From Mytilus californianus (taxonomy: Eukaryota), in the NCBI RefSeq assembly GCF_021869535.1, contig NW_026262734.1:102858001-102922000 (forward strand): a stretch of 64,000 nt of DNA, given 5' to 3'. The notes under the pieces are model-generated. The model had not been told where the DNA came from and searched no databases. It worked only from the letters and a program-made list of their open reading frames with translations. Each line of letters starts with the position of its first letter. Positions within the stretch are counted from its first letter, which is position 1. Positions 25,650 to 59,969 of this stretch are shown here, one piece after another. The translations under genes were made by a program, and so were the position numbers.

Positions 25650-25721
25650 AGTTCTCGTAAATTCAAGTTGTTAGCGAAAATATTCTGCGGTAAACTATCT
25701 ATATTGTTGCCTCCAAGATCA
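25650..25721 (-). CDS. LRR exon 7 of the minus-strand LRR gene: DLGGNNIDSLPQNIFANNLNLREL
   Basis: 72 nt, ctttcttttattatag|T...CT|gtaagt, phase 2/2, no stop. Confidence 0.9.
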
Positions 25722-27850
25722 CTATAATAAAAGAAAGTTATAACAAGTTTTAGATATCTGTGCTCACTTGTACATTAGAATGTACAATTTAGATAATGCA
25801 AAAGTACAAATAAATATTGTTATTGCAAAACTAATACACAAACCCTAGCATCAAAGGAGTTCAACGAATAATCAGACAACACTTCAAACCAGTACAATGG
25901 CACAGACAACAAATAATTCTGTTTTTGATTACGAGTTGCAAACTTTGTTTTATATTTCAATTTTAGGATATGCTACTCCTTATATGTCATTGAACGTAAA
26001 CGTAAATAAATCAGATAAAAGCTAGGAATGATATGGTCAACCACGAGTCCTTATTTTATAATGATGCATCTCCTTTGACGAAGCATATCACTGTATGAGG
26101 TAAGTGTAGTATTATTGAATGATTTTTCAAATGAGAATTTTTTAATATCATTCAAATTTAAATTTACGGTATTTAGTAGCAACCGTTTTAATAAATGTCA
26201 AAATTTGTGTTATTTTTACAATACTGACTTTTAATAGAACCTAAATAATCAAATATAGGAGGTATAAAAGACAAAGGTGGTATGAAATATTACTACAGTT
26301 TTTAGATTTAGACCTTGAAATGACTTTTAACCTAATATATTGAATCATGCCGATTTTCTGTTCTGTTTTATTATCTTAAAGTACAAAAGAAGATAGATAA
26401 CGCCTGAAAGGTTACCAATTTTACTGCAAAACCAATGTCTTCTTAATAATAACCAAGGCAAAGTTATAAAAAATTTAAAGTGGCCATCTGAATTTAATCC
26501 GGATTGAAAATTCTAACATTTTTTTACCTATAAATTAAATCCTTAAATTTGATAGTGCTAAACACAACTACCAAATAGCCTGGCATTCTGTAAGATCAAT
26601 ATATAATTGAGATAGCTGCAAAGTTTAATGAAAATCCAATTTATTTGAAAAAGTGATATACATGATTAAAGGTGACTATCGTAATTTAATCAGAACGGGA
26701 AATTCTACCTTTAATTTGAAAGCAATGAACCAGACTACAAAATAACCCATAAAATATAATAATACACAAGCAGTTTGAGAAAACTATTTGTACATAGTTG
26801 ATACGGATTTGGCGAAATAGCGAAAAGTAAATGTCAAAACTAACAACACTTTTTGGACCTATGCTTTTGATCTCAATATCCCTCAAATGATGTACAACCT
26901 TTTTTGAAAATCATACTTAGTCTGAATTGCTGACCTTTCAGAAGTTCCGAAGAAATATCACTTTAACTCAACTACAAAAACGGGATTGCTTTGTTCGAAA
27001 CTACGTGCGAAATTCAAAAGATGTGACAAAACCGTTAAAAAAATGTCGATATTTTTTACGTTTAAGTAGTAGTAGTGATAACAAGGACAAGATAACAAAC
27101 TGTTATAGAGAAATATCAGTAACCATATCTTTTTAACAACTTGCCAATACATTAGAGAGAAAAATAAAATTGACTGAACATGCTGAAGCAGACAAAATAA
27201 TTCAACATCAATCTTTCAGGAAATTTAAGTGTCTTTACACCCTGAAATTCACATTAAAAAAATAGTTCATTCTGGTTTTGAAAAAAATATTCGTGTCTAA
27301 CAAAATTTTATCTTACACTGATTTCATGTAGGTTTATGTACTAATTAATGTATAATAAGATAATATGCGATTTCAACTTCTTTTGAAATGTTTCCCAGCT
27401 TTAATTAATAAGTGGAAGAAGGACTGACAAAAATCTGAGTTGTTCTATAAGAATGAGCAGATCTTGCAACACACGTTTTTATAAACGGACAATTGTAGAA
27501 AGATTGTTATAAATCATGTCAGTACCGAAGTACTGACTACTGAGTTGATGATACCCTCGGGGACTAGTCCACCACCAGAGGTATCGACCCAGTGCTGTAA
27601 AAAACGAAAACAACACGTTATTTATTTAATGCGTCCGAAGCGCTTTTCCGGTAAAATATCATTTGAATGCATGCAGTGACGACATGTTCAATCAACAATT
27701 AAAAAATCTTTTTTAATATATGTTGCGGTTACTCAGGAGTGACAATAACAATCCGGCTCTGACAGAAAATCAATGAATGCTAATCAAATGACAGTATTTC
27801 TATTGCATCTAAGTTAAAGTGGTTCACTTACATCTCATATATGAAAGTAC

Positions 27851-27918
27851 AACATTTGCAAATATTTGTTTTAATTGGATCCTCGATAATTGTAATCAAC
27901 CTTTATTGGGATAGATGG
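27851..27918 (-). pseudogene. Decayed LRR pseudo-exon (HLSQ*RLITIIEDP..., shifted to NKYLQML)
   Basis: 68 nt, 4 short of 72, with a premature stop and a weak donor (gtactt). Paralog of 23416-23882. Confidence 0.45.
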
Positions 27919-29429
27919 CTGGTATTCCAATTACAAAGGAGTAGTAAAAACCAGGTTTTTTGAGGAACAAAATGTTCTAAAATAAATGTTTGGTTTAGTG
28001 TTGTGGGATTAAAAGACCATATTAATTCTTCGATTTCATGTACGTAATATCTTATCAAAATTCTGGAAAAATGAACTACAGCACAAATAAGACACACAAA
28101 ATAAATTTGCAGAAGAAATAATATAATTGAAGATATCTGTAACAGCTTTTATTGAATTTGTAAGAGCCCAATTGTGGGTTTACGACTTTAAATATATAAT
28201 AATTTAAATTGAATGCTTTTGGTAAAATCGTTATTGTTAAGACATAACTCTTTACAGCTGACTGACATGTGGTCAAAATAAACTAAAATTACATAAGGAT
28301 ATAACAAATAATATGCCCCTACCCCCAAAAAAGATTGTTGCATGAGGAGAATTAAAAAAAGTAACAAAGCAAAACTGCCATAATTAATATAAGTATTTAA
28401 CTGTATTGAAAATCTAGATTGCACAGTCTTGTCTTATTTTAGTCCGTTTACAAACAATATGATGAAGAAGTAGTTTATTCATTAAAAAAATGTCATTGCA
28501 ACATCATCACCAAGTCATGATTTATTTTTGTTTTTCAAAAATGGCGTACTGTTTTATGAATTCAATAAAATTAACAACCTTAATTTGAAAAATATTTAAC
28601 CTAAAACAATTACTTTGAAAAACAATCAGCTCCTATACATGTACGTGGCTTATAGGTTGCATTTCTGTAAATATCAACAATGCAATTTCCCATAGGAACT
28701 CCTTTCACGGATAAAACTGTACCACTTTTAATAAGAAGTTTTGAAAAAAAATATATCCTAGAATGGAAAGTTCATATGCACTACTATTTTTTTCAAATGT
28801 CAAAATATAGGGCTGTGCGGCATATTTTCAACGTTTATATGCCCCGAACTTCTAAGAGTTTAAACTTACATTAAATTTCTATAGTACCCCAACCTTGACT
28901 TTAGGATTTCCACAGACTTCAACTTGATCACTATGAATATGTATATTTACTGGTAACATTCCCAAGTTATGTCTCTATGAGATAAAATATAGAAATCATA
29001 TCCGGGAACCAGTGCGTAAACAAAATTAATTGTCTATGAATATTATATATCTCTCCAAAAGAGGCGTGGTTTGAAAAACAGCTGTATTTACAAAGTGAAA
29101 CCTTATTAATAGGTATGTTAGGCGCGAATTTCATTTGCATAAAACTGCTTAGTAGATGAAAAAAACACTTGAGAGATGTACCTCCTTCGAAAAGATTGTC
29201 TGGGTTAACGTCAGATTGTTTTCAAATGTTTTGCTATAAGTTCTTAAAATGCAGGAATTATTATGAGCAGAAGCAACTTCGGAACATGAAGGTGATATTG
29301 TTTGATACAATGCATATGTAAATTCCATTTGAAAAGGGAAAACTACAATGTCCTAACAATACCTTATCCAATATGTAATAAAAGTTAATGTCTCTAAAAT
29401 AAAATAAACAAACTAATACAATCCAGTAT

Positions 29430-30590
29430 GATTATTTTTGGTGACATATATGAACTGCTCCAAGAAACCTCTTTCAAAATTATTCACATCAAGTTTATCA
29501 TTAAAGCTGGGCTTCAACATTATTTTGAAACTACCTAATCTAGACATGCTAGAGGCGGCGTGAACCACATGTGGATGTTTAAATTTTTTTTGAGTATTTA
29601 CCATCTAAGACTCTTTCAATCTGCAATTGTATCAAAACACTTGACTGTTTTACCCTTTACACATGTTTTACCTATTCCAAACAAAAAGATAAATTGAAAG
29701 AATGGGTTCTGCTTTGTGTCATAAAAACAAGTTTGGCCAACGTAGATACAAGTATCTTGTCTAGGGGAGGAATACATCTTACTTTGTATAAAAGTCACTC
29801 TGATTCAAAACAACAAAGCCGCTGATATTGACATTATCAAGATCCTTTATTTCTTGATTGACAACATATTTGCTACGTTTTAAAGATGTCATCTTCAACA
29901 AACAATCGGCATTCCTTCGAAAACCAACTGTTCTCCTCATCTTGATAATTTACTCCTTAATTGATATGAGACTGACTTCATACAGGAGCGTCTTGGGAAG
30001 AACGACAAGAAGCAAGCATTATCCTTAAACTCACTTGCCGCTATATAGATAATGTATTATTATCAAACAAATTAAACTATGGTTACTTTCTTCAACGCAT
30101 TTATCACATTGAACTCGAAAAAAGGATAAACACACACAGAGGTAATTCTGTTTCATATTTTCAATGAAGGCCGGTTGAGATCAAATATTTATAATAAAAA
30201 TAATGATTTCAGCTTTCCAATTGTGAACGTTCCATTTTCTGTAGCAACATACCAGAATCATTTGCAAATGAAATATATAACTTCCAAGATGTTATATGAA
30301 GATGAAATAATCCCTTCGCAACTTTAAAGGACGCCATCACGAGTTTGTGTATTCTTATGGAATATATGTTTCATAGTTGCCGACTTTTATGTTCCGATTA
30401 TCGTAACAAAAATCAATTTGTCTTTTCCCCGAATGTGGTCCATCGAATTAGACTTATCACCGGGATTGTACTTATATGAGAAAAATGACGTTGCTTTGTT
30501 GGGGTTTTTGATACTGGCGTTGTGAGTTTATTTTCGACTTTTGAGTTTGAATGTCCATTTAGTATCTTTCGCCCCACTTTTATTATACAT
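29430..30590 (+). mobile_element. Degenerate Naiad-type Penelope-like RT fragment and 3' end (paralog of 24560-25445)
   Basis: FLIDNIFATF, QTIGIP and GRHHE-like segments, followed by the family 3' tail. Confidence 0.7.
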
Positions 30591-31064
30591 GAGGACATGA
30601 GGACACTGATGTTCGTTCTGCAATCAAAAGACTAAAATGTTCATAAACAACGTCAATTTTCGTTCTTTATCTGCAACAATGAGGATCAAAACGTTGGGGA
30701 GGAACTACAGATAAATTTATTTAATGATTAATTCAAAAAATTTTAAACCTTGTTAGAAGGAATGTCCTTTCTAGCCTACGCGCGAAAACACACAGCATCC
30801 AACATTTTTGGGAAAAGCACGAGAAGCTTTCTAATGTAAAGTAAAAGCTAAATGTTCAAGGATCATCAATACAAATAAGTGTCATAGATGATCGTCTTTA
30901 TTTTGTAATGCCAAAAGAACTGCATTTGTTTCAACCATTCACTCAAATGTTTGGGAAAATGAAACATTTAGAAGACAAAATAGAAAAATAATACACTAAC
31001 TTTGGTTTTAAAAAGTAAATGCACATGCATTATTGTGCTCGATTACTTTGTTAGAAATACTTAC

Positions 31065-31136
31065 AGTTTTTGTAAATTCAAGTTGTTAGCGAAAATATTC
31101 CGCGGTAAACTATCTATATTGTTCAAATCGAGATGA
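31065..31136 (-). CDS. LRR exon 6: HLDLNNIDSLPRNIFANNLNLQKL
   Basis: 72 nt, tttttatattttgtag|T...CT|gtaagt, phase 2/2, no stop. Confidence 0.9.
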
Positions 31137-31491
31137 CTACAAAATATAAAAATTATAAAAGTTAAAAAGATATCTAGGCTCACTTGTACATGAAAATGTA
31201 CAAAAAAAATAACGCAAAAGTACAAATGAAAATTGTTATTGCATAACTAATACACAAACCCTAGCACAGAAAACAAATAATTCTGTTTTTGCTCACGAAA
31301 TGCCAATTTTTTTTTATATTTCAAATTTAGGATGTGCTACTCCTTTTAAGACATTGAACGTAAACGTAAATAAATCCAACCAAAAAAAGCTACGAATTAT
31401 ATAGTCACACATGAGACTTTATTTCATTATAATGCACCTCCTTTATTATATCTTGACAAAATGAAGCACTATATGAGGTAAAGGTAGTTTA

Positions 31492-32010
31492 GTAAAATAA
31501 GGATTTTTTCGTGCAACGTTTTCGGCCTTTTTATTTCACGTGTTTTCGTGTTTTGACGTTTTATTTTTCGTTTTCTCGTGTTTGGTTCAATGTGCGTGCT
31601 TCGTGTTTCCCCTTATTTATTTTCCGTGTTTCGTGTCGGTACTCTTAATGTCTTGTTCTTGTCCCGCAATTATTAGAAAAGTCAACAGGGACTAATTCAA
31701 AGTCAGCCCGGATATTGTATATGTATGGCATGTAATAAAATCCATCACATTACAATGAATAATATTTTTTTTTTCAAATCAGATACAACTAGCGGACGCT
31801 AAAAGGTGACCACAAGGTCTTCATGTCCGTTAACAATGATTGCATGATCTCCAAGAACGGCTGGGTAATAACTTCTATTACCTTTTCCCTTATTATTTAC
31901 GATTTTATTTCTGGTGCTTCGTGTTAGCCGATCTTTATTTTTCGTGCAACGTTTTTGCGATTTTTATTTCACGTGTTTCCGTGTTTAGACCCCCCTTTAC
32001 CACCCTCTGA
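31492..32010. mobile_element. MITE-like insertion with GTGTTT(T/C)CGTG repeats
   Basis: Absent from paralog A near 26110. Ends CCCCCCTTTACCACCCTC. Confidence 0.55.
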
Positions 32011-32753
32011 AATGATTTTTAAAAGGTAACATATTTGATTTTACTAAAATTAATTCACGGTATTTAGTAGCAACCGTTGTAATAAATCGATAAATTGTGT
32101 TCTCCTTACAAAATTGACTTAAATAGAACCTGAATAATCACAAATAGGAGCTATAAAATACAAAGGTGGTTTGAAATATTACTATAGTTATTAGATCTAG
32201 AACTTAAAATGTCTATTAACCTAATATTAAATCATTTCGCTTTTGTTTTTTCTTGTTTCATCTTACATGTGTATTCACCTCATGGAATTATCATTGGTTT
32301 AACAGCATAGAAATAGGAGTAAAAGAAAATAAATAGTTCCAAGTTTACTGTATGTAGTCCCGTTTTCAACGAATTTGTCATAAGAAAATAATTTTGATTG
32401 ATGTTTTCCAAATATAGAAAATATTGTTTTTGGTATTGTAACATTCAATACTGTAAACATATCTAGTGAATTATTTTGAAACTTATCATCTTTAACATGT
32501 GAGTGAAATATTAGTGACTTAACTTAGATACGAAAAGCATGTTTTTCAATAATTCATGACAAAAAGAGAAGTATAATTCAAACTAACCATTCTTAATATA
32601 ATTGAGATCAATAAATAATTATTATTTAACATATTCCAGTTAGAGGTGGCGTGAATCAGATGTTGATACTAAGAAAATCCAAAGAGTACATACAATCGAA
32701 GAATCTTTAATTTTACAATAGTTTTTCAGCTCTTTTCATAATGCTAGCAAGAC

Positions 32754-33018: not shown

Positions 33019-33218
33019 TTTTTTTAAACAAAACGCATTTGACTAACAAGTCGAACAACAGATGATCTTAAACCCTGTCGACTGCTAATGACAATTGCCA
33101 AATAAATTGATCACCAGGTGTAACAAAATGGATCCTAAATATAAATTTAATATCAAACAGAAAACAATAAACTTGTGGTAAAGATGGCATACCGCAAACA
33201 TGAGGTGCAAAATTTTGT

Positions 33219-39885: not shown

Positions 39886-41955
39886 AACGAATTATTCATT
39901 GAATTCAAGGATATTCTGCTACCATTCCTAGAGGAAATGTTCAATAGGATATTAGCGTCAGGACTATTTTTCGAAAGCTTGGGCACTCGCAGTGTTAATT
40001 CCTGTTTTTAAAAAAGATGACTCGTCCGATCCAACGAACTATCGTGGAATCAGTTTGGTCAGTAATTTAGCGAAAGTATTTAATCTATTATGAATTCAAG
40101 GCTAATAAAATGGTCTGAGAACAATGATATTATCCACGATGCGCAATTTGGATTTTGCCCTGGTAACAGCACTGTTGATGCAATTTATTGTTTGTTGACA
40201 CTTGTCAAGAAGGCACTTTTCAAGAAAAAAAAAACGTTTATATTGCTGCTTCGTTGACTACAAACAGGCATTTGACTCCGTATCCAGACTTTACTTATGG
40301 TTGAAACTGTGAAGAGTTGGTATAACAGGAAAATTGCTGTCTGTTTTAAAATCAATGTAATCTACAGTAAAAGTATGTGTAAAAATTGATGGTTTTTATT
40401 CTGAGCAGTTTACAAGTCAGGTTGGTCTTATGCAAGGGGAAGTTCTTTCCCCTATACTTTTTTCGTTATATGTCAATGACTTTGAAATGGAATTCCTACG
40501 TAATAGTAATATACCATATGAAGTACAAGATTTATCATTATTTTTTAATATGCACGCTGATGACATCATTTTATTTTCTGATTCAGTTACTGGCTTGCAA
40601 GATATGTTAGACACACTTTTATTATATACTTGTAAATGGGGTTTGACTGAATATATTTCCAAAACAAAAATTATGGTATTTAGAAACGGAGGTTTTGTGA
40701 AAGACGAAGAAATCTGGTATTATGATGGCAATGCTATTGACATAGTGGATGAAATTTGTTACCTTGATGTACTGTTAAATTCTAACGGTAAATTTGTTAA
40801 AGCTCAAAAGCTGAGCAAAGTAGAAAAGCTGTATTTGGTTTAAAGTCGAAGGTTTCGTCATTGTATTTGAATGTTTTTACATATTTGAATTTGTTTGATA
40901 CTTATACTAGGAGTATTCTATGTTAGGGGTGTGATATATGGGGCTTCCATAAACCTCCAAATATTGAAAAAATACAACTTAATTTTTGCAAAAATATATT
41001 AGGTGTCAAACAGTGTACAACAAATGTTATGGTTTATTTTAAATTGGGTAGATATACTTTGATATATTTTAGAATGTACAAAATAGTGACGTACTGGTTA
41101 AAATTATTATCCATAAGCAACTGTATTCTTAAAAACTGTTAAAGGGAACAACTGTATAATTTCTGTAACATAAGAAGCAGTTTGTTTATCAACTACAACA
41201 AGTATTATTTACCTTAGGTTTAAATGAGATTTGGTATAACCAAGACAATTTGATATTTGATACAAATTTATTATTGATTGTAAAAACAAGGATATATGAT
41301 CAAGCAAAACAGACTTTAAATGCTCAAATGAACATTTCATCTTAATGTTATTTATATAAATATATTGTCAATAATGTATGTTTGCAGAATTATCTCACTA
41401 AACATATGAATTTTAGAGTGTATTTAACTCGGCTAAGATTGTCTTCACGTAACTTGTTTGTTGAAGTAGGCCGTTATCATGGAGTAAGTAGATTAGACAG
41501 AAAGTGTACTCTTTGTTCTTTGAATACCACTGAAGATGAATTTCATTTTGTTTTACAATGTGAATGCTATAGAGATTTAAGGATACAGTTTATTAAACCT
41601 TATTATTATAGGCGTCCATCGTCGTTCAAATTAGTTCAACTTCTCAGCATTGAAAATGTCAAAGATTTGCGTAATTTGTGTAAATTATTATTTAATAAAC
41701 TTAATCATAGAACTGAACTCTTAGTGCACAATACTTGTTATTATACTTCATGTCAAAATGCCAGATTTTGATTGGTTAATACGAGGGAGACAATTTACTC
41801 TATCCCATGGCAAATACTCTATTACCCTTCGCGGAGACGCTTGATGAAGTGAGTGTGCGCTTTATTAAATACAGATGATTGTTATGTACATAGTTTATTA
41901 CTTTGAATTTAAAATTTAGTACACAGTAATAACAGAACATTCAGTATAATAAATT

Positions 41956-46308: not shown

Positions 46309-47510
46309 CTTCGATTTATTTGTGTTAAGAATTAATTGTTTTCCAAATTGGAAGTAATGTTTGTACAAACTGGATTATCGATAGAATGCTGAAAGGTTTA
46401 CAATAGTCTCATTTTAGCTGCATATATTAACTTTGGTAAAGATACGTCGCCATATATTACACTGAATTGTTTTGTACATGATATCAGTTACACTTAAGCC
46501 AAATATCTAAAAAGTAAAATGAAAAAAAAAAATAAATAACGAGGTTCAGGGAAAATTCAAAACTTCGTTTGGTGTGTCCTGGTGTAATGTTGTAAATTCT
46601 TCGGAGATGTCTTTTGTTATTCTGCATTTACATGTTGTAATGTACTTCTATATTATCCATTTATGCATTTCTCTGTTTTGACTGTTCTTGTGTTTGTTTG
46701 TACTGAATTCCTGTCACGCAATGTTATCATTATAGCGGTATTTTTAACATTGCCATATAAGCGGGACGTTTTGTCAGCAATAAAACAACGTTCAACTCAC
46801 CATTTTTCTTAAATAGCCCTGTACCAAGTCAGGACTTTGGCAGTTGTTATCAAATAGTACGTTTCTATGAATGTTGGCGTCTGTTTTTTTTTTTTTTTTG
46901 CAGTTCTGTGTTTCTGTTGTTTCGTTGTTTTGCTCTTATAGTTGATGTGTTTCCTTCAGTTTTAGTTTTAACCCGGATATATTTTTGTTTTATGAATTTA
47001 TCACTATCGAACAGCGATATACAACTGTTGCCTTTATGATAATGTTAATTACCATACCACCATATCAAATTTGATTTTGATCTCGAGTGAATTGAATTAT
47101 TGTGAAACATATTTTTATATTGACAATTATTTTATATTGACAATATGCAATCGATTGTTTCGATTTACAACTTATTTTACGCAATGATAATTGATATCAG
47201 AGTCAATCCTAAACACATTACCTCTCCCTCAGCTTTTACAGATTATCAAAATTAATCAGGAATAGCGAAAATAATACTTTGTTCCACAATTTTGACTATT
47301 TTTATGTTTTCAGAAATAAACAGTAGTATTAAAGTTCAGATTGTCGTAATTATGGTTAATGCATAAATAATATCCTAAGGTCGGTCGACAAATAGTATTT
47401 CAGGAATGATAAACAAACTGTGCATTGAAGATTTCTTCGAAAAAAATGAAGCTTTTAGCCAGCATCGCATTTGATAGTTTTTGGTAGCAGTTATTGATAA
47501 TCAAACTTAC

Positions 47511-47582
47511 AGTACTTGCAAAGCAACGTTGGAGGACAACAGATCAGGTGGCAAAATCGTCAAAGTATTCCTTTGGAGGAAT
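47511..47582 (-). CDS. LRR exon 5: FLQRNTLTILPPDLLSSNVALQVL
   Basis: 72 nt, ttttccttttttaaaag|A...CT|gtaagt, phase 2/2, no stop. Confidence 0.9.
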
Positions 47583-48571
47583 CTTTTAAAAAAGGAAAAA
47601 TATAATAACTTTTTAAGACATAACCAAATAAAAATACAAAATTGAAAAAAAATAAAAGTTCACGCTTCGTTAACGCCAAAATACAGAGGGAATATTTGTG
47701 CATACAAGTAATCAAAAGACAAACAACTGCAATCGATTGTTTCAAATTCTGTTAAAATACTTATATTTGTATTATTGTTTTGTCTTTAGACACAACGTAA
47801 TAGCCGGCTGTCTTCGTCTTATATTTGGGACGATATCAGAAAAAATATTCGTTGAGTGTTTAATACACATTGCATGAATTGTTTGATGTAGTCATTGTGC
47901 ATTGTAATTCACTCGAAAACACAACATGATTCTTTTCATGTCATCTCAAAGAAAAAAATCATGAATTTTATTTTTAATTCCTTTGAACTTCAAAGATAAA
48001 GGCATGGATTTTCCTCCATTGTATTGTATATTAAAATGACACAATTGTTCTCACAAACAACTTTAAAAGCATTATATTGGTTGGTCTGCCTAATAATTCA
48101 AACAAACTCTTCCCAAATGATTAAAATAGTTTCTATCTTATTGCAGTAATAAACCAGTTAGAAGACGTTCTTGACAACTCATAGCCTCTGGCCTTTGTGA
48201 TTCTTGTATGTTTTTTTTTTATTTTAGTTTAATTATGTGTTTTGGGGTTTAGTGTGACGTCCATTTTCTCTGAACTAATACACATTTTAGATAATGGGCC
48301 ATCTGAAGACCGCCTCTAGGTGCGAGATTATCTCGCTGTGTTGAACACCCATTAGTGGCCTTTGGCGGTTTTCTGCTTTTTGGTCGGATTGTTGTCTCTT
48401 TGACACATTTCCCATATCCATTTTCAATTTTATTAATATAAAGCCTATATATTCGAAAAAAATGACCAGGGCAAAGGTTTCCGATACCAACTCAAATATG
48501 AGTATAGCATTTTTTATTAGGTAAATACTATCAACAAACAACGTAAATGAATGAAGTTATGTTCTACTTAC

Positions 48572-48643
48572 AATATTATCAGTGCTACATTGTTCCTTAA
48601 AACACCATCAGGTACGCTAGTTAGATTGTTGTCGTTCAAAGAC
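48572..48643 (-). CDS. LRR exon 4: SLNDNNLTSVPDGVLRNNVALIIL
   Basis: 72 nt, tttttattctcattaag|G...TT|gtaagt, phase 2/2, no stop. Confidence 0.9.
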
Positions 48644-49924
48644 CTTAATGAGAATAAAAAAAAGCAAGCCAATGTTTACTCTTTAATGTCCTATATTTCA
48701 AACACTTACAGAATAAAAGTAGAGTTTATAGGAGATCATAATATATATATAATTACATAGAATGTGTCGATAGTAAAGGAAGAAAGAACCAGAAATAATA
48801 AGGCAATCAAAAACTAATTTTATAGCAACTAACGTATCAACTATGACAACAATATATTACCAGATCATAGACATTTCCAATAAAATGACATACGTACGTA
48901 ACTCGACGTACGGACTTAATGGGACTGTTTTTTTCCAACCATTGAATTTGTTTAAATACGTCGCTCAAGTTTAAACAAAGAATTCCAAGACAAATCACAC
49001 ACAGGAATTTTCGTTTATATAAAATAATTTTAGCATGACGAAAAATAATAGAAATCTTCCATTTTCATTTATCACGTGGTTCTCCAGATTCTTGCCTTTA
49101 GTTTCACTGACAATCATCAGATTACGTATAAACACACGTATTCCATACCTATCATACGATCGATTTGAGTTATCTTTCATGGTTTTGATTATGAAAATTA
49201 TTTTTCAATATACTTTGCAGATGAACGGCCCATTATGTTTATTTTTCGTTATTCGATGTTTTTCTTTCTTTCCTTTTTTCTTCCTTCTCTCTTTCTCTAT
49301 CTTTTTATTATATTTGCTGTTAAAGAAGGATATCATTTCTGACAATATCAGAAATATCGAAACCAGTGTTTGTCAGAATCTTTCTCTTTACAAAAGTTGA
49401 AAACTGAGATAAAACTATCGCTGCCAATTAATGTCTAAACAATAGTATTTTTCGTTCATTATAAAATGTGTTGATAAAAAATTCCCTATATTGGTTGTAT
49501 TGTAGACGGTGTGCCCGATTAAGGATTGTTCTGTGTTGTTTTGTTTTACGAGAATGTAAAGGAGTCCAAATACGAAAGACATTTCCAGGCAATTTTTTTT
49601 TTTTCAATATCCCTTGAAGCAAATTAACTTATAGTATTTTATCAATTTCATTGTCTTAAAAATAAATTATTGGGGGGGGGGGGGGGGGGGGGGGTGTCCA
49701 CAGAATTCGTGTTACTGCATAAATAATTAACGGAAATGTGTTAGGAAAGAAACCTAGAACAACATAAGATAATAAGATTTCGTTGCCAGATGCGGATCCA
49801 GGATTTTGAAAGGGGGATCTAGGCAACGTCAGAAGTAGAATATAAAATATAAGTATTACTAGGATGTAGGTTCATATATATAAATGTTCGTTGCATATGT
49901 ATTTCACATATACATATTTAGGAC

Positions 49925-50160
49925 GAGAAGATGAATATGAACCAGACTTTTTATTATACCGCAGGAAGACATGTCACCCTACTCGGACACATGATTCTGA
50001 CTCCGGACCGAGCCATCTTTGCTCTTACTCCTAAATATTGCGTGCTTGGCAGAGATGCAGTCAATCTTCGATTTGAACCGGGCGAGGATCGAGCCCAATT
50101 CTTCTCTCATTCGAGCAGTTGTGTAGCTTCCATTGACGCAATGAGGCAACAGCCTCATCA
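49925..50160 (-). mobile_element. tRNA-derived SINE
   Basis: Minus strand has a B-box-like GGGCTCGATCCTCG, then GGAGTAAGAGCAAAGA..GGCTCGG..GTGTCCGAGTAGGGTGACATGTC. Confidence 0.65.
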
Positions 50161-51589
50161 AATGTTTGACCATTAAAAAAGAGAGATAAAGAGAAAATAT
50201 ATACCGTGTATTTCATAGTATAGAATATACAGAGTGACGACGGTTCAAAACGTTGACTGCTTTTCTCTTTACTCATTCATTTCTCGTTATTAACGTCTTG
50301 AAAAATATACGTCAAACTTTCTTTCATAAAATGAACACGGTAGAGTCAAATATCTTTTTTTAAGGAACAGACAAGGTATACCTCACAAAAAAAAAAAAAA
50401 TGATTCAAACAAGATGTCATAACTGTGAATCTGACATGATGCTTGATTTCGTTTTTGGCAAACGAACTTGTTACTTTAGGTAGACGTAGTTTTAAACAGA
50501 CACAAGGCATTCCTGCATTTTATGTAGTACTCTTCCTACTGATACGTACCGTGGTTAATATAAGCAAGACTTCATAGTTCACCCAGTTATTGTATTCCAT
50601 GCATTTTGACAAAAGCTAAACGTATGAAGTTAAAAGACATAGTGGATCTTAAACTTTAATATCACTAAATATATACAAAAACATTTTAGAGGAGGTCATA
50701 CATATAATTCTGTCAATTATTTTTTGTTTTGATCAGGACCTGTCTGTAATTGAATACTGAAAAAAGTAAAATCACAAAAATACTGAACTCCGAGAAAATT
50801 ATACCTTTAACCAGCAGTTTCATTAAAATATTTTGATTTAATGCGCACTGAACATATTATTATTTCGTGATAAAATTCCACAAATCTGGATTTTTCATAG
50901 ACAGGATCTTTGTGTCTATCAAAAGTATGGTCACCTACACCCCTCCACCCTTTTTTTTGGGGTGTTTCCTTAGCGTTGCAGGATGTACCAGTATGTACTC
51001 TATAAGATTATATTCAACTTTATAACATGTTTAAAAAGGTCGTCCGTTTGGTTGTCAGGAAAGTATAAATACACAGCCACGTCTAGTAGGAGTAGTGTTT
51101 CAACAAATCTAATGTAGGTGCGTACATTAGTTCTACACGGAACAGAACCAAGGATCCATAGTGGGTCTGTAGCCATACAAAATGTTAGACCCTATGTAAC
51201 ATGCTCTTTTTTCCAGGTACAATTGAAATTTATGCTGTTATCATGGTCGACCTAGTGTACATATCTATTGTATTATTTTGTTTTACTTATCCTGAATATG
51301 CATGCACTTTTTTGTCTCTTAGTGTCCGATAACAACATTCAATTAAATAATAAATCAGACGTGTTTAAAATTATGATTTTTCTTGCATTTGTAAATGCTG
51401 AAAACTATTTTGCGATTCAGACTTTTAACTAACCATCTACTCTCTATTGGCATTGACGTATTTTAACCAAGTTGAGGCTTTGACTGCCAAAATTTAAATC
51501 ATTTGCCTCATCAGCAATGAAATCTAAGGTACGCTACTGTCGATGGATAGATAGTTGGTTGCTTAAAGTCAATGGCAAATATTTCATGC

Positions 51590-51825
51590 ATATTACACGT
51601 GCAGAGAGCGTGGCATTCTTTCTACCAGAAGCATCTAATTTAACGTCTCCACTCTGACCGGAAGTGATTGCGTAGATGTACATCCCGCACAGTCAAACGG
51701 ACGCCCCACTTTGGCAATGGTTTAACTGCTGGTCGGAACAAGACCAATAGTGACCAAATTTCTATTCCCCGGTCAGCCTGGAGGGGTTACTGTCGAGGCG
51801 AGCACGCTACCACAAGACCAAAGCG
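51590..51825 (-). mobile_element. tRNA-derived SINE (mirrored copy at about 52900-53105 on plus)
   Basis: Head TGGTCTTGTGGTAGCGTGCTCGCCTCG and body GGGAATAGAAAT..GGTCACTATTG..GTTAAACCATTGCCAAAGTGG. Confidence 0.65.
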
Positions 51826-54800
51826 ACAATAATGAAAATGGAGGATAATATACATGTACATGTATTAATCAGAACATTTGCAGCAAGAATATGTGGCTTT
51901 AAGACATCGTGCCCCTTCACATGATCATATTTCCATGTGCAGCGGACCACTAAATCCAGGTCAAACTATAAATTGGTATATACTTTTAAACGTTTTATAT
52001 TTTGAACGGAACGGAACGGAAGAACGAACGGATGAACAGACCAGTAAATATCATATCCCTTTGTTATCATAAGTTGGTCATAAAACTAAAATGATCATCC
52101 TACTTCAAAACGTCATTCAAATATTCCGTACATGTCCGTTTTTCATACGTATTTGCATAAGTTAAACGCCAAACATTTTAGAAAAGCAATTTAAGAGCAA
52201 TGAAGTTAAATTACGCATACGTTTGTACGGACTCTTCCTAGAATCAATGCATCATTATAATTAAAGACAAGAAGTAAAAATGTTAACTGATTCAGTAAAG
52301 TGTAATCATATTTTTGCTTGACGATGCGTCCTCATAATTCCATTTGGTAAAATTCTACGGAATGGTGACAAACAACTACCAGAAAGATGCATCAGTGATC
52401 TGAATTACTACCTCTAACAAAAGTTTCTTGAAACAAATAAAGAAGTATGCTAAAAAAAAAAGAAAAAACAATTCATGTACACCTTTTACATTCCGGCGTG
52501 TTTGAAACTCTTGTTTTAATCTTATAACTTATAAATAAAAAATTAGAATATCATCTCGATTCAAATTCCACTATTTTTATTTTTTGATACTTTTAAAATT
52601 TTGATTTGGTAGTTTAAGAAATCACTGTTTGAGAGATAAATATATGGGTCAAGTGAAATGATAAAGTAATGATCGGTGCATTTGATTACCGGTAACTGAA
52701 TTAGTTATTCCCTTGAAAGGTTGTTATCAATAAAATCATTTCAAATTTAATAATAAAATATGTAAAGAATGAAAATAGCAGATTACGCTAATTTTTAAAT
52801 AGCATCTGTTCCAACAAAGTATGTGTATTCAACGAGTCAAAAATCCATGCAGTCTATGCTACCTACCGTCATCCATCAATGCAATAGGCCGACATACGGT
52901 CAGATGGGTTGGTTATGCCGAGTAATGACATTTTTATTCTAAAAGATGATCAAGGGAATAGAAATATGGTCACTATTGATCTTGTTCCGTTAAACCATTG
53001 CCAAAGTGGATAGTTCGTTTAGATGTGCGGGATGTACAAGTACGCAGTCCCGTCCGTTTAGAGTTGGGACGTTAAAACCGATGACTCTTTTAGATATAAT
53101 GTCACGCTCTCTAAATGTTAATATTACATGAAATATATGCAACTGGACGTTGACCAACCAACTATCAATCAATCGACAGTAGCGTAACTTGAATTTTATT
53201 TCTGGTGAGGCAAATGATTAAAACTTGGCAGATAAAAGCCTCACTTTGGTTTAAAGACGTCAATGCCAGTAGGGAGTGGACGGTTACTTGAAAAAATGAA
53301 TCGCAAAATAGGTGTAGGTGATCATACACTTGATAGGTCAAACAATAGCAACAAGATACTATTTATGAAAAATCCAGATTTGTGGAATTCTATCATGAAA
53401 TAATATTTCTAGTGCGCATTTAATCAATATATTTCAATGAAACTTCTGGTTAAAGGCTTAATTCTCAGTATTCGGTTAAGTATTTAGAATTCAGATAGGT
53501 TCCTGATAAAAAAAAATGACAGAATTATATGTATTACCTCCTCTAAGATGATTTTGTACAGATTTGGGGATACGACTAAGTTTAAGATCCACTATGTCTC
53601 TTAACTTATACGTGTAGCTTTTGTCAACATGTATTGATGATAATAACTGGGAGAACTATTTAGTCTTGCTCATGTTAAACATGATAGAAGAGTACTACAT
53701 AAAATGTAGGAATGCCAAGTGTCTGTTGAAACTTTACCCACCAAAAGTAACAAGTTCGTTGTCAAAAAATTAAAAAAAAAAAGCAAGCATCATATCAGTT
53801 TCACAGTTATGACCTCATGTTTGGATCAGTTTTTTGCGAATTATACTTTGTCTGTTACTTAAAAAATATATTTGTATCTACCTTGTTCATTCTAAATTGC
53901 ATCTTGGATCCGCATGTGGCAACGAAATCTTAATATATAATGTTCTTCAATGTTACTTACCTTACACATTTCCGTTAATGATTTCTTCATTAAAATGAAT
54001 TCGGTAACCCCGCTTTTAGTTATTTATCAATAAAATGGATAAAATGCTCTAAATTAGTTCACTTCAAGGGATATCAAATCTATTCCCTGGAAATATCTTT
54101 TGTATTTGGACTTCGATAGCATTCCCGTTAAACAAATCAATACAGAACAATCCCTAATCGAACACACCTTAATTCTATTAAAAAAAACAACATATATAGG
54201 AATTTCGTTATCAATAAATTTTATAATAAATGAAAAATACTTTTGTTAATAAATTAAAAAGAAGCGATAATTTTATCTGAATTGTTAACATTTATAAAGA
54301 GACAGATTCTGAAAAATTCTACTTTCGATATTTCTGAAAATGTCAGAAACATATCCTTCTAAATATTTTCCCCGCATCAAATATAATAAAAAAGATAGAT
54401 AAACTATAAAGAAAGACAGAAAAAAATATAATGGGGCGTTCATCTGCAAAGTATATTGAAAAATAATTGTCATAATCAAAAACATGAAAGATAACTCGAA
54501 TCGTACGTATGATAGGTATGGGATACAATACGTGATCTTATGTCAGTAAAATAAAGGCGGGAATCTGGAAAACCATAAACGAAAATGCAATATTTCTATC
54601 ATTTTTCGTTATGATAATTTATTTTTATAGGGTCGAAAATTCCAATGTGTGATTTTAAAAGTCTTGGAATTCTTTGTTTAAACTTAAGCGACGTATTTAA
54701 TCAAACTCGATGGTTGGCAATAATCCGTCCCATTAGGTTCGTACGTCTAATTACGTACGTATGTCATTTTATTGGAAATCTCTATTATAATGTGCCTGTT

Positions 54801-55799
54801 ACTTCACAAACTAGTGCTGATGACAGCTATTTGACTTTTTTATTTCATGTTTTCATAACGTCTATTTTGCTTAATGCATGTTAATAACACCTAACTTTTT
54901 CAAGACTGTGTGTTCCCCTTCAGAAAAGTTTTAAATCATTGTAATGTTAGGTCGCTGAGGTTTTCACAAAATCATTGTATTGATCGTTGTAATTTCGTAC
55001 TATAAATTTAAATGCTGAAGAAACCTCTTATGTGTAAGTAATAAATAATATTCCCCAACAGCTTCCAAAAAGGGAAACATGATGGCATAAATGTTAACTG
55101 GATACATTTAAACTTTATACCAAACTTCACAATAAAGTACATCAACTTTTTCGTTGGCGTCTTTGTTAAATTCATGTGTAGGTTTGTTTTAATTTTTTAG
55201 TCAGTTGTGTTGTATGTCTGTGACCTATGTTTTCATAAGTTTTCGCTGCTGAATCCAAATTAAAGTCACATTAACCTATAACATCTGTTTGAGTCGCTCA
55301 CCCAATTTTGTCAATATAATGGAACTATAAACAAATGTCATACGATTAGGAGTTTAGGCTAGCTCGAACACCAGGTCTAACTCACTATTTTTTCAGAGAA
55401 TACCTTTACCAAGTCAGGAATATGACAGGTTTGTTACACTCGTTCCGTTTGTTGATGACGTTTAATTTGACAGCTTTTATTGACTTTCCCCTTTTCTAAT
55501 TTACCTAAGTATTTTTATTATACTGTTTTTTTTTAGAATAATAACAAAAATGAATCAATACACAACTTTGACCTTGCTGTACTTTAAGCAAATGTTTTCA
55601 GAAATAAACAGTAGTATCAAAGTTCAGACTGTCGTAATTATGGTTAATGCATAAATAATATCCTAAGGTCGGTCAAGAAATAGTATATCAGGAAACATAA
55701 ATAAACCTTGCATTGAATATTTCTGCGAAAAACTTGAAGCTTTTTGCCAGCATGGCATTTGATATTTTTTGGTAGCAGTTATTGATAATCAATACTTAC

Positions 55800-55871
55800 A
55801 GCAATTTCAAAGCAACGCTAGAGGTCAACAGATCACGTGGCAAAATCGTCAAAGTATTCATGTGAATGTAT
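55800..55871 (-). CDS. LRR exon 3: YIHMNTLTILPRDLLTSSVALKLL
   Basis: 72 nt, tctttcctttttattaaaaag|A...CT|gtaagt, phase 2/2, no stop. Confidence 0.9.
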
Positions 55872-56807
55872 CTTTTTAATAAAAAGGAAAGATTGATAAC
55901 TTTTTTAAAGACAGAATCAAATGTAAATACAAAAATAAAAAAAAAATAAAAGTTCACGCTTCATTTACATGATTAACGCCAAAAATAGAGAAAGTATTTA
56001 TGCATACAAGTACTCAAAAGAAAAAAAAGAGAACTGCGATCGATTGTTATTTTACGTTATAATAATTGATTTCAGAGTTAACCCTAAACACACTACTTTT
56101 CTCTCAAATATTACAGATTATCAAAATGAATCAGGAATAGCTAAAAGTAAATTTGTTCCACAATTTTGAACTATCATGTATCAACGTCACCAGAGGATTA
56201 TATAATTGATAGGATTGACATATGAAAGATAAATTGAATTATAACCGAAAGAGTGTGCTATAAGACTATTCTCATGTCTCATATCTAACGATTGCTAATG
56301 AGTGTTTTTTGTCCGTATAAACACGAGTTTTAAACGCTGTTAATAGATATAAGAAGATGAAGTATGAGTGCCAATGAGACAACTCTCCATCCAAGACACA
56401 ATTTACAAAAGTAAACCATTAAAAGTCACAGTACGGTGTTCAACACGGAGCCTTGGCTCACACCGAACAGCAAGCTATAAAGGGCCCCAAAAATGACTAG
56501 TGTAAAACCATTCAAACGGGAAAACCAACGGTCTAATCTATATAAAAAACGAGAAACGAAAATCACTTATGAACAACATCAACAAACGACAACTACTGAA
56601 CATCAGATTCCTGACTTAGGAAAGTGCAAACATGAACAGTAGTGACATAAAAAAACAAATGATGTAAATAGATTCATCTTAAAAACTTCAAACATAATCG
56701 GGTTTTGATAACGACTGAAAAGCTTCATTCAAGTAAAAAACCATGACGAATAATATACGGGTTTATCATATTTACCTAAAACAACATTTGAATTAAAGCG
56801 TGGGCTA

Positions 56808-57152
56808 ATAGTTATCAAAGGTAACAGGCTTATAATTTAATACGCCAGACGCGCGCTTCGTCTACATAAGACTCATCAGTGACGCTCAGATCAAAATAGT
56901 TAGAAAGCCAATCAAGTATAAAGTTGAAATGCATTTATGACACAAAATTCCAAAAAGTTGTGCCAAATACGGCTAAGGTTATCTATGCCTGGGAAAGAAA
57001 ATCCTTAGTATTTTGAATAGTTCATACTTTTGCAAACAGTTAATTTATAAAAAATGACCATATAATTTATATCCATGTCAACACCGAAGTACTGACTACT
57101 GGGCTGGTGATACCCTCGGGGACGAAACGTCCACCAGCAGTGGCATCGACCC
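56808..57152 (-). mobile_element. Near full-length retrozyme-like monomer (about 345 bp) with type I hammerhead (56842-56885)
   Basis: GCGUCA CUGAUGA GUC-uuaugua-GAC GAAG CGCGCG UC UGGCGU, with an A15.1-to-G change. A branched stem-loop lies at 57095-57152. Confidence 0.75.
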
Positions 57153-58239
57153 TGAAAACCTGCCTTGTCTTTGTCGCACCCAACAATCGAAAGACAATCT
57201 AAATTTTTCACATTATATGTCAAAACAACTCTAAAAAATAGCGTAAGTCACATCTCAAATCCTAGATCTGCTCATATTTTGTCAATTAGCCATACATATC
57301 AAAGGGGTATACGATGAACGGATAAAGCATTTTGGATGACCTATGTCTATTATCATAGTTTGTACATGTTGTATATTTTGAGAGAATAAAAACAGATAGC
57401 GCAACTACGTGTAATGACAACTATATTTACTATTGCCATAGTTGAAATAATGTTTGCAATTCTTTAAATTTTGTTATTTATACTTATACTTATATTACTG
57501 TCGTTAGAAAAAAACTTAATAGCCGGCTGTCTTCGTCTTATTTTTCGGAGGATATCAGAAAGCATATTCGTTGAGTGTTTAATCCAAATTGCATAAATTG
57601 TTTTATGAAGTCATTGTGCATAGAAATTCACTCGGAGACAAAACATTTTTCCTTTTATGTCTTCTTACAAAAAAAAAAATCCGGAATCCTGTTTTTAATT
57701 CATTTTAATTTCAAAGATAAAGGCATGGATCTTCCTCCATTGTATTGTATACTTAAATGACATATATTTTCTCACAAACAACCTTAAAAGCATTATATTG
57801 GGTGGTCTGTCAAATTATTCAAACAAACTCTTTCAAAATGAGTATAGACGTTTGTATCTTATTGTAGCAATAAACCATTTAGAAGACGTTCTGGATAACT
57901 CATGGCCTATGGCCTTTCTTAGTCTTGTATGATTTTTTAATTTGAGTTCATTTATATGTTTTGGAGTTAAGGGTGACATCCATTTTGTCTGAACTAGTAC
58001 ACATTTTAGTTTGGGGGCCAGCTGAAGCTCGACTCCGGTTGCGGGATTTCCTAGCTGTGTTGAAGAACAATTAGTGGTCTTGGGCTGTTTTCTGATCTTT
58101 GGTCGGATTGTTGTCTCTTTGACACATTCCCATGTACTTAGATTAAAATGTGTTTCTTTCGAAAAGAACAATTTAAACTTTTTTTAAAATCTTTTTTGTC
58201 GAAATCAAGATTTTCGCATGATTTATTTACTGACAATAT

Positions 58240-58600
58240 ATTTTCAATGTACAATTGGAAATCCGATGGAAACTCACTGTGATCCTCTTTCAACGTGATT
58301 CTTTATTCACTTGAGTCATAAGTTATACAGGGGGATTATAAGAAATCAACACAATTCTTTAACTGCGAGTTTCGCTATTTCGATACTGTCCTCTTATTTT
58401 AGGATTCGAAAGTTTGGTGACTTTGCTAAACTCAACTTCGTTATCAAACTAAAAAGGATACTGCAAAAACTTATCTAGACTTATATTTAAAAAATGATCA
58501 GGATTATTGATAACAAAGGTGTAAATCAAGATTGATGATTTCAGATTTTAATTGTGATGTTTCCATTTCTATGTAGCAACGTTGTAGCAGCGTTTCATCT
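58240..58600 (+). mobile_element. Highly degenerate Naiad-type RT fragment
   Basis: Remnants of the FRY..D.L and YLDL..DDF.F.IV.FPFLCSN segments. Confidence 0.5.
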
Positions 58601-59897
58601 ATAGCATAAATCTGCGAGAGGAAACGAAAAATAAGAGCTTTGATTTCATTTCAAATAATTCCAAAATATAGTGTAACTGCTTAAAATGAAACTTTTATTG
58701 AATGGTTCAAAGAAGTGAAAAGTTAAAAAAAAAATAATATCAAACTCCATGGATAATTAATAACGGAAAGTCCCTTATCAAATGGCAAAATAAAACTCTC
58801 AAACACAACAAACTAATAAAAAACAAATGTCATAATGAAGACTTGGTTCAGGCATTTCCGTTTGTAGAAACTGGTGGATTAATTTTGAAAATTTAACGGA
58901 TGTAATCATGAGATTTTTTTATCGTTATGGATGATCTGTGTCACTGATGACCACCAAAATGTTTCAGTTGTCGGAACAACAATCCTCTCGTCTTGTCTCG
59001 ATTGTCACATATTTTAACTAAATATTAACGAATAAGAATAGTCACTAACATGAGTTACGCGACGGGTTCCACAAATGGAACAACTAATTGCTACCTGTCT
59101 GGAGCGACTGTGATCACCTCCAGTGTAAGATTTGTATTGCTCATCTTCAGTTTTCATATGTAGTGTTGTGTACAAAGTTGTTCGTTTTCTGTTTTTACCA
59201 TTGTTTTGTCGGTTTCTGATCGACTCATGAATTATGATTGTCGCATCAATATTTGTCGTCTAAGCGCAATAACGAACTGGTTAGTATTTTTACATTCATG
59301 TTCAAATTTTCATTTACTGGTTTTAACTTGGATCAACAATTCAATGTGAACGGTTTCTCGCAAGAGTGACGTACGTCAGCAAAATGAAGATAATGTTATG
59401 ATTCATTTTTTCAATTATATAAAAAAGGTTCCTTGTTTAATCATGTATATAATCTGATGATAGTGCTCAAAACAAACACACATGCAAATAATTTTTATCT
59501 TTTTTCTCTGTCTTTCCTTTTTCTATATTATTTGTTAGTATACCTCTTTAATAACAGATGTCTGATTAGAACAATGTAATCATGAATCTGATATTTGAAA
59601 GCTTTGAATTCTATTGATCAATATTGTATCTTATGATAAGACAATCAAAGTGGGACTAAATTGTGTTTAATACTTTTTTGCAAATAAATATGTTTAAACT
59701 AAAAAGAAACTTACTTCTCATTTGTATACTTAATGTTTCTACATGAAGCCAATATGTTTGAGAAAAAAAAACAATGACCAGGGCAAAGGTTTGCAAAGCC
59801 AAAGTTGAATCAAAAGATGAGCATAGCAAATTTTTTATTGGGTAAATACTATCCTGTCAACAAACAACGTATATGATTGAAGATATGTTCTACTTAC

Positions 59898-59969
59898 AAA
59901 ATTATCAATGCTATGTTGTTCCTGAAAACACCACCAGGTACGCTAGTAAGATTGTTGTTGTCCAAAAAC
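59898..59969 (-). CDS. LRR exon 2: FLDNNNLTSVPGGVFRNNIALIIL
   Basis: 72 nt, ttttttgttcttatttag|G...TT|gtaagt, phase 2/2, no stop. Confidence 0.9.

What the first reader, a model, noticed from the sequence alone, without database searches (positions are those of the whole stretch)
25650..59969. Paralogous LRR exons diverge at the ligand-facing positions
Seen: three paralog pairs were compared (25650 vs 31065, 47511 vs 55800, 48572 vs 59898). At codons 1, 3, 4, 22 and 23 of the exon, which are the x positions of LxxLxLxxN, 13 of 15 residues differ. At the other 18 codons only 8 of 54 differ. In the 25650/31065 pair, 8 of 10 nucleotide differences fall in those five codons (DLGG to HLDL, RE to QK), while codons 5-21 differ at a single base. 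Established: these x residues line the concave beta-sheet, and the same pattern marks diversifying selection in VLRs, plant R proteins and TLRs. Inference: this is a functional, rapidly diversifying recognition receptor, plausibly immune, and the gene is alive rather than a relic.
Basis: partly seen in the sequence, partly recalled or inferred. Interest (0 to 1): 0.85.

Follow-up and report, generated by a model that had tools for sequence, protein, structure and literature searches.

The report
Mussel LRR gene, duplicated diverging exons
The window holds the middle of a spliced gene for a leucine-rich-repeat binding protein whose one-repeat exons were duplicated in place and then changed about three times faster than neutral DNA at the residues that would touch a ligand; this is a known way for such proteins to evolve, and neither an immune role nor expression is shown.

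Summary
At the five concave-face codons 13 of 15 residues differ between the paired exons. At the other 18 codons 8 of 54 differ.

The pairs are intragenic tandem duplications that include their introns, so the introns give a neutral yardstick.
- Concave codons differ at 40% of bases.
- Aligned introns differ at 14-17%.
- The rest of the exons differ at 8%.
- Simulation with the intron substitution spectrum: 13 residue changes against 5.1 expected (P about 7e-5); elsewhere 8 against 17 (P 0.004).
- dN at concave sites is about 0.58, against dS and intron K of about 0.18.

All seven 72-base exons keep AG/GTAAGT splice sites, one phase and an open 167-residue product. Both copies have therefore stayed under selection.

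Not supported:
- No receptor or immune domain lies in the window.
- One RNA run gave no reads on three exons.
- A second individual shows almost no allelic variation.

The sample is small, and five adjacent changed bases may be one event. The layout (72-base, phase-2 LRR exons, selection on concave sites) is already described in brown-alga ROCO genes. This scan has also reported the same pattern at other loci of this genome. Verdict: a new member of a known kind.

The parts
60672..60743 (-). LRR exon a (72 nt, phase-2 introns on both sides), older paralogue of b and b'
   Evidence: flanks homologous to the b' unit at about 70-75%
59898..59969 (-). LRR exon b', copy of b
55800..55871 (-). LRR exon c', copy of c. 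The related species' copy differs at codons 18, 22 (two bases) and 23, and silently at split codon 24
48572..48643 (-). LRR exon b
47511..47582 (-). LRR exon c
31065..31136 (-). LRR exon d', copy of d
25650..25721 (-). LRR exon d, the last LRR exon seen in the window
22200..32265 (.). Tandem duplication of a one-exon unit (about 22200-26380 and 26765-32265). Aligned intron mismatch is 17.4% (K 0.20)
47172..48713 (.). Copy 1 of the two-exon cassette (b and c with their introns)
55592..60037 (.). Copy 2 of the two-exon cassette (b' and c'), enlarged by repeat insertions. Aligned intron mismatch to copy 1 is 14.2% (K 0.16)

Best explanation
The window holds an internal part of one multi-exon gene on the minus strand. 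It encodes an extracellular-type ('typical' 24-residue) leucine-rich-repeat solenoid in which every repeat is its own 72-nt exon between phase-2 introns.

The repeat array grew by tandem duplication of genomic segments that carry exons together with their introns: a one-exon unit (d', d), a two-exon cassette (b' c', b c), and earlier a/b. Because each exon is 72 nt in one phase, every new copy splices in frame and adds one turn to the solenoid.

After duplication, selection kept the scaffold (L, N, P, F positions), the convex-side residues and the splice sites. The five side chains that point out of the concave beta-sheet (xxLxLxx) were replaced faster than neutral DNA changes. The new repeats therefore offer a different binding surface.

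Shown here: the exon structure, the duplications, the rate contrast and the open frame. Inferred: that all seven exons are spliced into one mRNA, that the excess reflects positive selection for altered binding, and any role in immunity.
For: - Exon structure: seven exons with AG/GTAAGT, all 72 nt and in one phase. Every split codon 24 reads Leu across the junctions, and the product is an open 167 residues.
- LRR class: the exon profile matches solved LRR proteins of the typical class (VLR-B 3.6e-12, LRRTM 2.2e-12, Nogo receptor, LRG1).
- Duplication: the duplicates include their introns.
- Base differences: x codons 18/45, introns 14-17%, the rest of the exons 14/171.
- Neutral simulation: x residues 13 against 5.07 expected (P 6.5e-5); non-x residues 8 against 17.06 (P 0.004).
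- Nei-Gojobori: dN(x) 0.579, against dS(non-x) 0.178 and dN(non-x) 0.067.
- Exposed concave against exposed convex positions: 13/15 against 5/27 (P 4e-5).
- In the one-exon unit the exon core is the best-conserved 60-nt stretch of the whole 4-5 kb duplicate.
- All six duplicated donors keep GTAAGT.
- Independent replicate: in a related species the orthologous c' exon carries a third state at x codons 22 and 23 (K/Q/A and L/V/F), and exon a varies at x codon 4.
Against: - Only 15 x codons were compared.
- Five adjacent changed bases in d/d' may be a single event. If runs are counted once there are 14 events in 45 bases: P 0.006 at the measured neutral rate, but 0.05 if the neutral rate is 0.20.
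- Intron divergence from local alignments underestimates the true neutral rate.
- Exon dS rests on nine changes.
- No RNA read lay on exons a, b' or c' among 10 million reads of one run.
- No first or last exon and no other domain lies in the window, so a single transcript is not proven.
- The x codons all lie at the exon ends, so a process tied to exon ends cannot be separated from one tied to structure.
Confidence: 0.55

Rival explanations
1. Relaxed constraint only. The concave x positions are simply free to vary, and the apparent excess over neutral comes from a few multi-base events, short conversion tracts copied from other LRR exons, and an underestimated neutral rate. There is no selection for new binding.
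For: Five consecutive changed bases in codons 3-4 of d/d'. With runs counted once and a neutral rate of 0.20-0.25 the base-level excess is no longer significant. dN(x) against exon dS alone is only borderline. In the related species, contigs laid on exon a reach a summed depth of 258 in eight pieces, which hints at many similar exons that could act as donors.
Against: The residue-level excess stays significant up to an assumed neutral divergence of about 0.35. Equally exposed convex positions stay conserved, 5/27. The same codons changed again in the related species. In c/c' four of the last nine exon bases differ, next to an intron stretch that is 92% identical.
Confidence: 0.2
2. The gene, or at least the extra exon copies, is no longer used. 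The pattern records past selection, and the locus is now a silent relic or the copies are skipped pseudo-exons.
For: Zero RNA depth on three exons in one RNA-seq run of the species, while nearby repeats are covered. The head and tail of the gene are not in the window. Under neutrality all three copies would stay free of stops 31% of the time, so the open frame alone proves little.
Against: Non-x residues and bases are conserved below the neutral expectation (P 0.004 and 0.003). All 14 splice sites are intact, including six identical GTAAGT donors. The related species keeps an intact c' exon. Only about 6% of one run of unknown tissue was read.
Confidence: 0.1
3. The duplicated same-phase exons are used as alternative (cassette or mutually exclusive) exons, so that one gene yields several binding surfaces. 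This is what is reported for brown-alga ROCO LRR exons and, in principle, for Dscam.
For: Each duplicate is 72 nt in the same phase. Every junction gives Leu, or Phe where b or b' joins d or d', at codon 24, so any subset splices in frame. A 207-nt intron stretch just downstream of both c and c' is 92% identical, more than the exons themselves. Alternative splicing of such exons is described in PMC11378527.
Against: There is no RNA evidence at all. The conserved intron piece has no unusual fold (z 1.27) and no Rfam match. Adding repeats to a solenoid needs no alternative splicing.
Confidence: 0.05
4. It is a conserved developmental or hormone-type LRR protein (LGR-like or Slit-like). These families also have one repeat per 72-nt exon, and the divergence between repeats would then have nothing to do with pathogen recognition.
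For: Phase-2 single-repeat exons are the layout of the gonadotrophin receptor genes (statement in PMC11378527). The duplications predate the split from the related species and are kept there. Little variation was seen within the species.
Against: No 7TM, EGF or other such exon lies in the window. Two separate lineage-level duplications, with faster-than-neutral change on the binding face, are not what a conserved single-copy receptor usually shows.
Confidence: 0.1

Closest known systems
Brown-alga ROCO genes with shuffled LRR exons (Zambounis et al. 2012 as cited in PMC11378527)
   Same: One LRR per 72-bp exon, phase 2. Repeat number grows by exon duplication or shuffling. Positively selected sites lie on the concave face.
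   Different: A different kingdom and surely an independent origin. Those are cytoplasmic LRR-ROC-COR proteins, whereas these repeats are of the extracellular typical class. No ROC-COR is seen here. Alternative splicing is shown there and not here.
Glycoprotein-hormone receptor / LGR genes
   Same: A single LRR per exon of about 72 nt, and all introns in phase 2 (for the published statement; for this locus).
   Different: No 7TM exon lies in the window. LGRs are conserved, low-copy genes without recent internal duplications or fast concave-face change.
Lamprey and hagfish variable lymphocyte receptors
   Same: The same LRR class by sequence profile, and variation focused on the xxLxLxx residues.
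   Different: VLR cassettes have no splice sites and are copied somatically into an incomplete germline gene. Here every unit is an ordinary exon with AG/GTAAGT, in order and in phase.
Mussel LRR exon-array genes reported earlier in this scan (s1-340015, s1-279510, s1-302513)
   Same: The same genome, 72-base single-repeat exons, recent exon amplification, and change focused on ligand-facing residues.
   Different: Those loci were called LRR-TSP1 genes with many dead exon copies. Here only seven exons are seen, all intact, and no TSP1 motif was found in the window. Whether it is the same family was not tested.

Membership tests
Typical-class extracellular LRR solenoid (Pfam LRR_8 type) | 24-residue period with LxxLxLxxNxLxxLPxxxF consensus | tested here: met
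   Seven exons align without gaps, and N5, P11 and L21 are invariant. The profile hits VLR, LRRTM, Nogo receptor, LRG1 and GPIb-alpha. One exon alone gives LRR_8 at E 0.0055, below the cut-off, as expected for a single repeat.
Typical-class extracellular LRR solenoid (Pfam LRR_8 type) | Signal peptide and cysteine caps (LRRNT, LRRCT) | tested here: inconclusive
   Motif scans and open-frame lists found none in the window. The ends of the gene probably lie outside the window.
Diversifying selection on an LRR binding face | Non-synonymous rate at the xxLxLxx sites above the neutral rate | tested here: met
   dN(x) 0.579 against dS 0.178-0.229 and intron K 0.16-0.20. Simulation P 6.5e-5. The sample is small and the result is sensitive to how clustered changes are counted.
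Diversifying selection on an LRR binding face | Purifying selection on the scaffold in the same copies | tested here: met
   Non-x residues 8 against 17.06 expected (P 0.004). dN/dS at non-x codons is about 0.38.
Diversifying selection on an LRR binding face | High allelic variation at the same sites within the species | tested here: not met
   Contigs of another individual differ from the window at 1 of 672 and 3 of 1896 bases around exons c' and b'. One variant lies at x codon 4 of exon a. Contigs drop rare variants, so this is a weak test.
LGR / glycoprotein-hormone receptor | One LRR per exon with phase-2 introns | tested here: met
   The family's layout is as stated in PMC11378527.
LGR / glycoprotein-hormone receptor | Rhodopsin-type 7TM domain downstream of the LRRs | tested here: inconclusive
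   No long coding exon lies downstream of 25650 on the minus strand. It could lie beyond the window.
Variable lymphocyte receptor system | Cassettes without splice signals that are assembled somatically into an incomplete gene | tested here: not met
   All seven units are canonical exons in order, on one strand and in one phase.
Toll-like receptor | TIR domain after a transmembrane segment | tested here: inconclusive
   Only a crude motif scan was run. It gave one chance-like hit on the other strand. The tail of the gene is not in the window.
Mussel LRR-TSP1 exon-array genes (earlier notes of this scan) | Thrombospondin type-1 repeats after the LRR array | tested here: inconclusive
   No WSxW / CSxTCG motif on the minus strand of the window. 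The tail of the gene is not in the window.

The most novel reading that the evidence does not exclude
The tandem, same-phase duplicate exons (b'c' / bc and d' / d) are chosen alternatively during splicing. One mussel gene would then produce a set of LRR proteins with different concave faces: a Dscam-like or brown-alga-ROCO-like way of making recognition diversity in a bivalve. The unusually conserved 207-nt intron piece after c and c' would act in exon choice.
Probability: 0.05. Interest if true: 0.75.

Novelty: new member of a known kind. Interest (0 to 1): 0.35.

Why it matters
Bivalves have very large and variable sets of recognition genes. This locus is a clean small example of how an LRR binding surface is extended and re-tuned. 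Because the introns were duplicated with the exons, the neutral rate can be read beside the selected sites. Most LRR families, whose repeats sit in one exon, do not allow that. It does not open a new question: the mechanism and the exon layout are known, and the same pattern has been reported at other loci of this genome.

Tried and rejected
- Finding more exons. A regular-expression scan and an HMM of the seven exons over all six frames found no further LRR exon. Scans for LRRNT, LRRCT, TSP1, TIR and cysteine-rich motifs, and lists of open frames, found no other coding exon on the minus strand.
- Naming the family.
  - A profile search of 1.84 billion representatives returned generic, largely bacterial multi-LRR proteins. 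The intron-derived columns of the first row were kept in the profile, which weakened it.
  - Local blastp of the spliced product against those 150 proteins gave at best 44-46% identity.
  - Their Pfam architectures are unrelated to each other.
- Reaching other assemblies. Exact-product look-ups with three ORFs of the window were blank.
- RNA support. One run gave no reads on the exons.
- The conserved intron piece after c and c'. It has no Rfam match and no unusual fold.
- Steps left out. The 167-residue spliced product has no reference and would have had to be typed, so it was not sent to the homology, atlas or structure tools. No AlphaFold model was made. The mapping of x sites to the concave face rests on the established LRR fold and on the profile match to solved LRR structures.
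- First simulation.
- Operator limits.
Full report
**What is there.**
Each is 72 nt long, preceded by a pyrimidine tract and AG and followed by GTAAGT.
- A scan of all six frames with a motif, and then with an HMM built from the exons, found one more exon of the same kind at 60672-60743 and no others.
- In gene order the exons are a (60672), b' (59898), c' (55800), b (48572), c (47511), d' (31065) and d (25650). The introns between them measure 0.7, 4.0, 7.2, 1.0, 16.4 and 5.3 kb.
- Each exon carries one base that completes the previous codon, then 23 codons, then two bases of a split codon. All introns are therefore in phase 2.
- The split codon reads Leu at every junction. Joined, the exons give an open product of 167 residues with a regular xLxxNxLxxLPxxxFxxNxxLxxL period.
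- A profile of the seven exons matches solved LRR proteins of the typical extracellular class: variable lymphocyte receptors, LRRTM, Nogo receptor, LRG1 and GPIb-alpha.
- With L21 as the first Leu of LxxLxLxxN, codons 22, 23, 1, 3 and 4 are the xxLxLxx positions. By the established LRR fold these point out of the concave sheet. The same positions are reported as selected in PMC11378527.

**The pairs are duplications of DNA segments, not just of exons.**
- A self-comparison of the window shows two blocks.
  - About 22200-26380 is repeated at 26765-32265. This unit carries d and d'.
  - 47172-48713 is repeated at 55592-60037. This is a two-exon cassette carrying b and c, then b' and c', and the second copy is enlarged by repeat insertions.
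- Exon a with its flanks is an older, roughly 70%-alike copy of the b unit.
- Outside the exons, the aligned parts differ at 17.4% of bases in the first block (K 0.20) and at 14.2% in the second (K 0.16).

**Check of the counts.** They are exact.

| Pair | x-site residues differing | Other residues differing |
|---|---|---|
| d / d' | 5 of 5 | 1 of 18 |
| c / c' | 5 of 5 | 4 of 18 |
| b / b' | 3 of 5 | 3 of 18 |
| Total | 13 of 15 | 8 of 54 (Fisher P 4e-7) |

- In d/d', 10 bases differ, 8 of them in the five x codons. Codons 5-21 differ at one base.
- Over all pairs, x codons differ at 18 of 45 bases and the rest of the exons at 14 of 171.

**Is it more than relaxed constraint?** A concentration of differences at x sites is what any pair of LRR repeats shows. 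The telling question is whether those sites changed faster than neutral DNA. I mutated each exon in silico with the base-specific substitution spectrum of its own block's introns, 200,000 times.

| Measure | Neutral expectation | Seen | P |
|---|---|---|---|
| Residue changes at x sites | 5.07 | 13 | 6.5e-5 |
| Residue changes at the other codons | 17.06 | 8 | 0.004 |
| Base changes in x codons | 7.35 | 18 | 1e-4 |
| Base changes elsewhere in the exons | 26.9 | 14 | 0.003 |

- Nei-Gojobori estimates give dN 0.579 at x codons, dS 0.178 and dN 0.067 at the other codons, and dS 0.229 over all codons. Omega is therefore about 2.5-3.3 at the concave sites and about 0.4 elsewhere.
- Nine positions on the convex side are also exposed and not part of the scaffold. 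They differ at only 5 of 27, against 13 of 15 for the concave ones (P 4e-5).
- In the one-exon unit the exon core is the best-conserved 60-nt stretch of the whole duplicate.
- All six duplicated donors are still GTAAGT.

**Limits of that test.**
- Fifteen codons is a small sample.
- Five adjacent bases differ in codons 3-4 of d/d', and this may be one event. If runs of adjacent changes are counted once there are 14 events in 45 bases. That gives P 0.006 at the measured neutral rate, 0.05 at a rate of 0.20 and 0.22 at a rate of 0.25.
- The residue-level excess holds up to an assumed neutral divergence of about 0.35.
- Local alignments leave out the most diverged intron parts, so the neutral rate is a lower bound.
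- The x codons all lie within the first 12 and last 8 bases of the exon. Structure and position in the exon are therefore confounded.
- Against an exon-end artefact: the donor-side intron next to codons 22-23 is well conserved. In c/c' four of the last nine exon bases differ beside a 207-nt intron stretch that is 92% identical.

**Evidence from reads** (one call each was allowed). I laid four runs on 55700-60800, which covers exons a, b' and c'.
- An RNA-seq run of the same species (about 10 million reads read, about 6% of the run) covers only the repeat insertions in the introns. It has zero depth on all three exons and shows no splice joints.
- DNA contigs of another individual of the same species differ from the window at 1 base in 672 around c' and at 3 in 1896 around b'. 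No allelic hypervariability is seen.
- Contigs of a related species match at about 96-97% in the introns. That species therefore has this very copy of the cassette, and the duplication is several times older than the species split.
- In that species exon c' differs at five bases: codon 18 (S to N), codon 22 at two bases (K to A), codon 23 (L to F), and a silent change in split codon 24. The contig has 12 differences in 370 nt, so at least 5 of them fall in the 72 exon bases.
- Codons 22 and 23 thus show three states each (K/Q/A and L/V/F) across c', c and the related species' c'.
- Exon a varies at x codon 4 (S to N).
- The table of differences was truncated, so these are minimum counts.

**What the gene is.** I could not name the family.
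- No signal peptide, cysteine cap, TSP1, TIR, 7TM or other coding exon is recognisable in the window. Both ends of the gene probably lie outside it.
- A profile search of the 1.84 billion representatives gave generic, largely bacterial multi-LRR proteins. The best of them are 44-46% identical to the spliced product and have unrelated architectures.
- Exact-product look-ups with three ORFs of the window were blank.
- The spliced product has no reference, so I did not send it to the homology or structure tools.
- Earlier agents of this scan call the genome a mussel (Mytilus). I did not test that.

**Comparison with what is known.**
- The layout of one LRR per 72-bp exon in phase 2 is that of the gonadotrophin receptor genes and of brown-alga ROCO genes.
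- In the ROCO genes, exon shuffling, positive selection at concave sites and alternative splicing are described (PMC11378527).
- The focus of variation on xxLxLxx is the classic pattern of VLRs, plant R proteins and TLRs.
- The locus is not VLR-like in mechanism: every unit is an ordinary exon.
- This scan has reported the same pattern before on other DNA of this genome (s1-340015, s1-279510, s1-302513). The two duplications here were also noted separately (s1-342917, s1-342967), and I confirmed both.

**Verdict.**
- The reading as a live gene under selection, with a diversifying binding face, is reasonably supported.
- 'Receptor', 'immune' and 'rapid' are not shown, and the only expression test was negative.
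- It is a new member of a known kind.

Noticed in passing
window 48864-54788: A large imperfect palindrome (arms about 48864-51769 and 52954-54788, 75-92% complementary, loop about 1.2 kb) fills the 7.2-kb intron exactly between the two copies of the two-exon cassette. It may be a foldback-type element or a by-product of the duplication.
   Followed up: partly
window 47304-47510 and 55592-55799: The 207 nt of intron just downstream of exons c and c' are 92% identical. That is more than the exons (83%) and more than the block average (86%). No Rfam match and no unusual fold. Unexplained; it could be a recent conversion tract or a splicing element.
   Followed up: partly
codon 12 of exons d/d', c/c', b/b' (gene index 35; window 25686/31101, 47547/55836, 48608/59934): All three pairs differ at the second base of codon 12, the residue after the conserved LP (Q/R, P/R, D/G). 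It is the only convex-side position that changed in every pair.
   Followed up: no
window 56213-57238, 57923-58264, 58436-58948: Intronic repeat insertions in the second cassette copy are very high-copy in the DNA runs and are covered by RNA reads on both strands, while the flanking unique intron and the exons have none.
   Followed up: no
window 60659-60800 (exon a): In the related species eight contigs with a summed depth of 258 lie on this bin, against about 20-30 on neighbouring unique bins. This suggests several near-identical copies of this exon elsewhere in that genome.
   Followed up: no
window 21874-22220 and 22662-23008: A 347-nt direct repeat at 98.6% identity sits at the edge of the one-exon duplication unit, next to the GC-richer tandem-repeat region 20137-21055.
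   Followed up: no
window 40430-41771 (+): Reverse-transcriptase-like open frames of a retroelement lie inside the 16-kb intron between exons c and d'.
   Followed up: no
window 5713-7050 and 11631-12960: A 1.3-kb direct repeat at 99.2% identity, with 170-190-nt tandem arrays beside it (9708-10498, 11414-12110).
   Followed up: no
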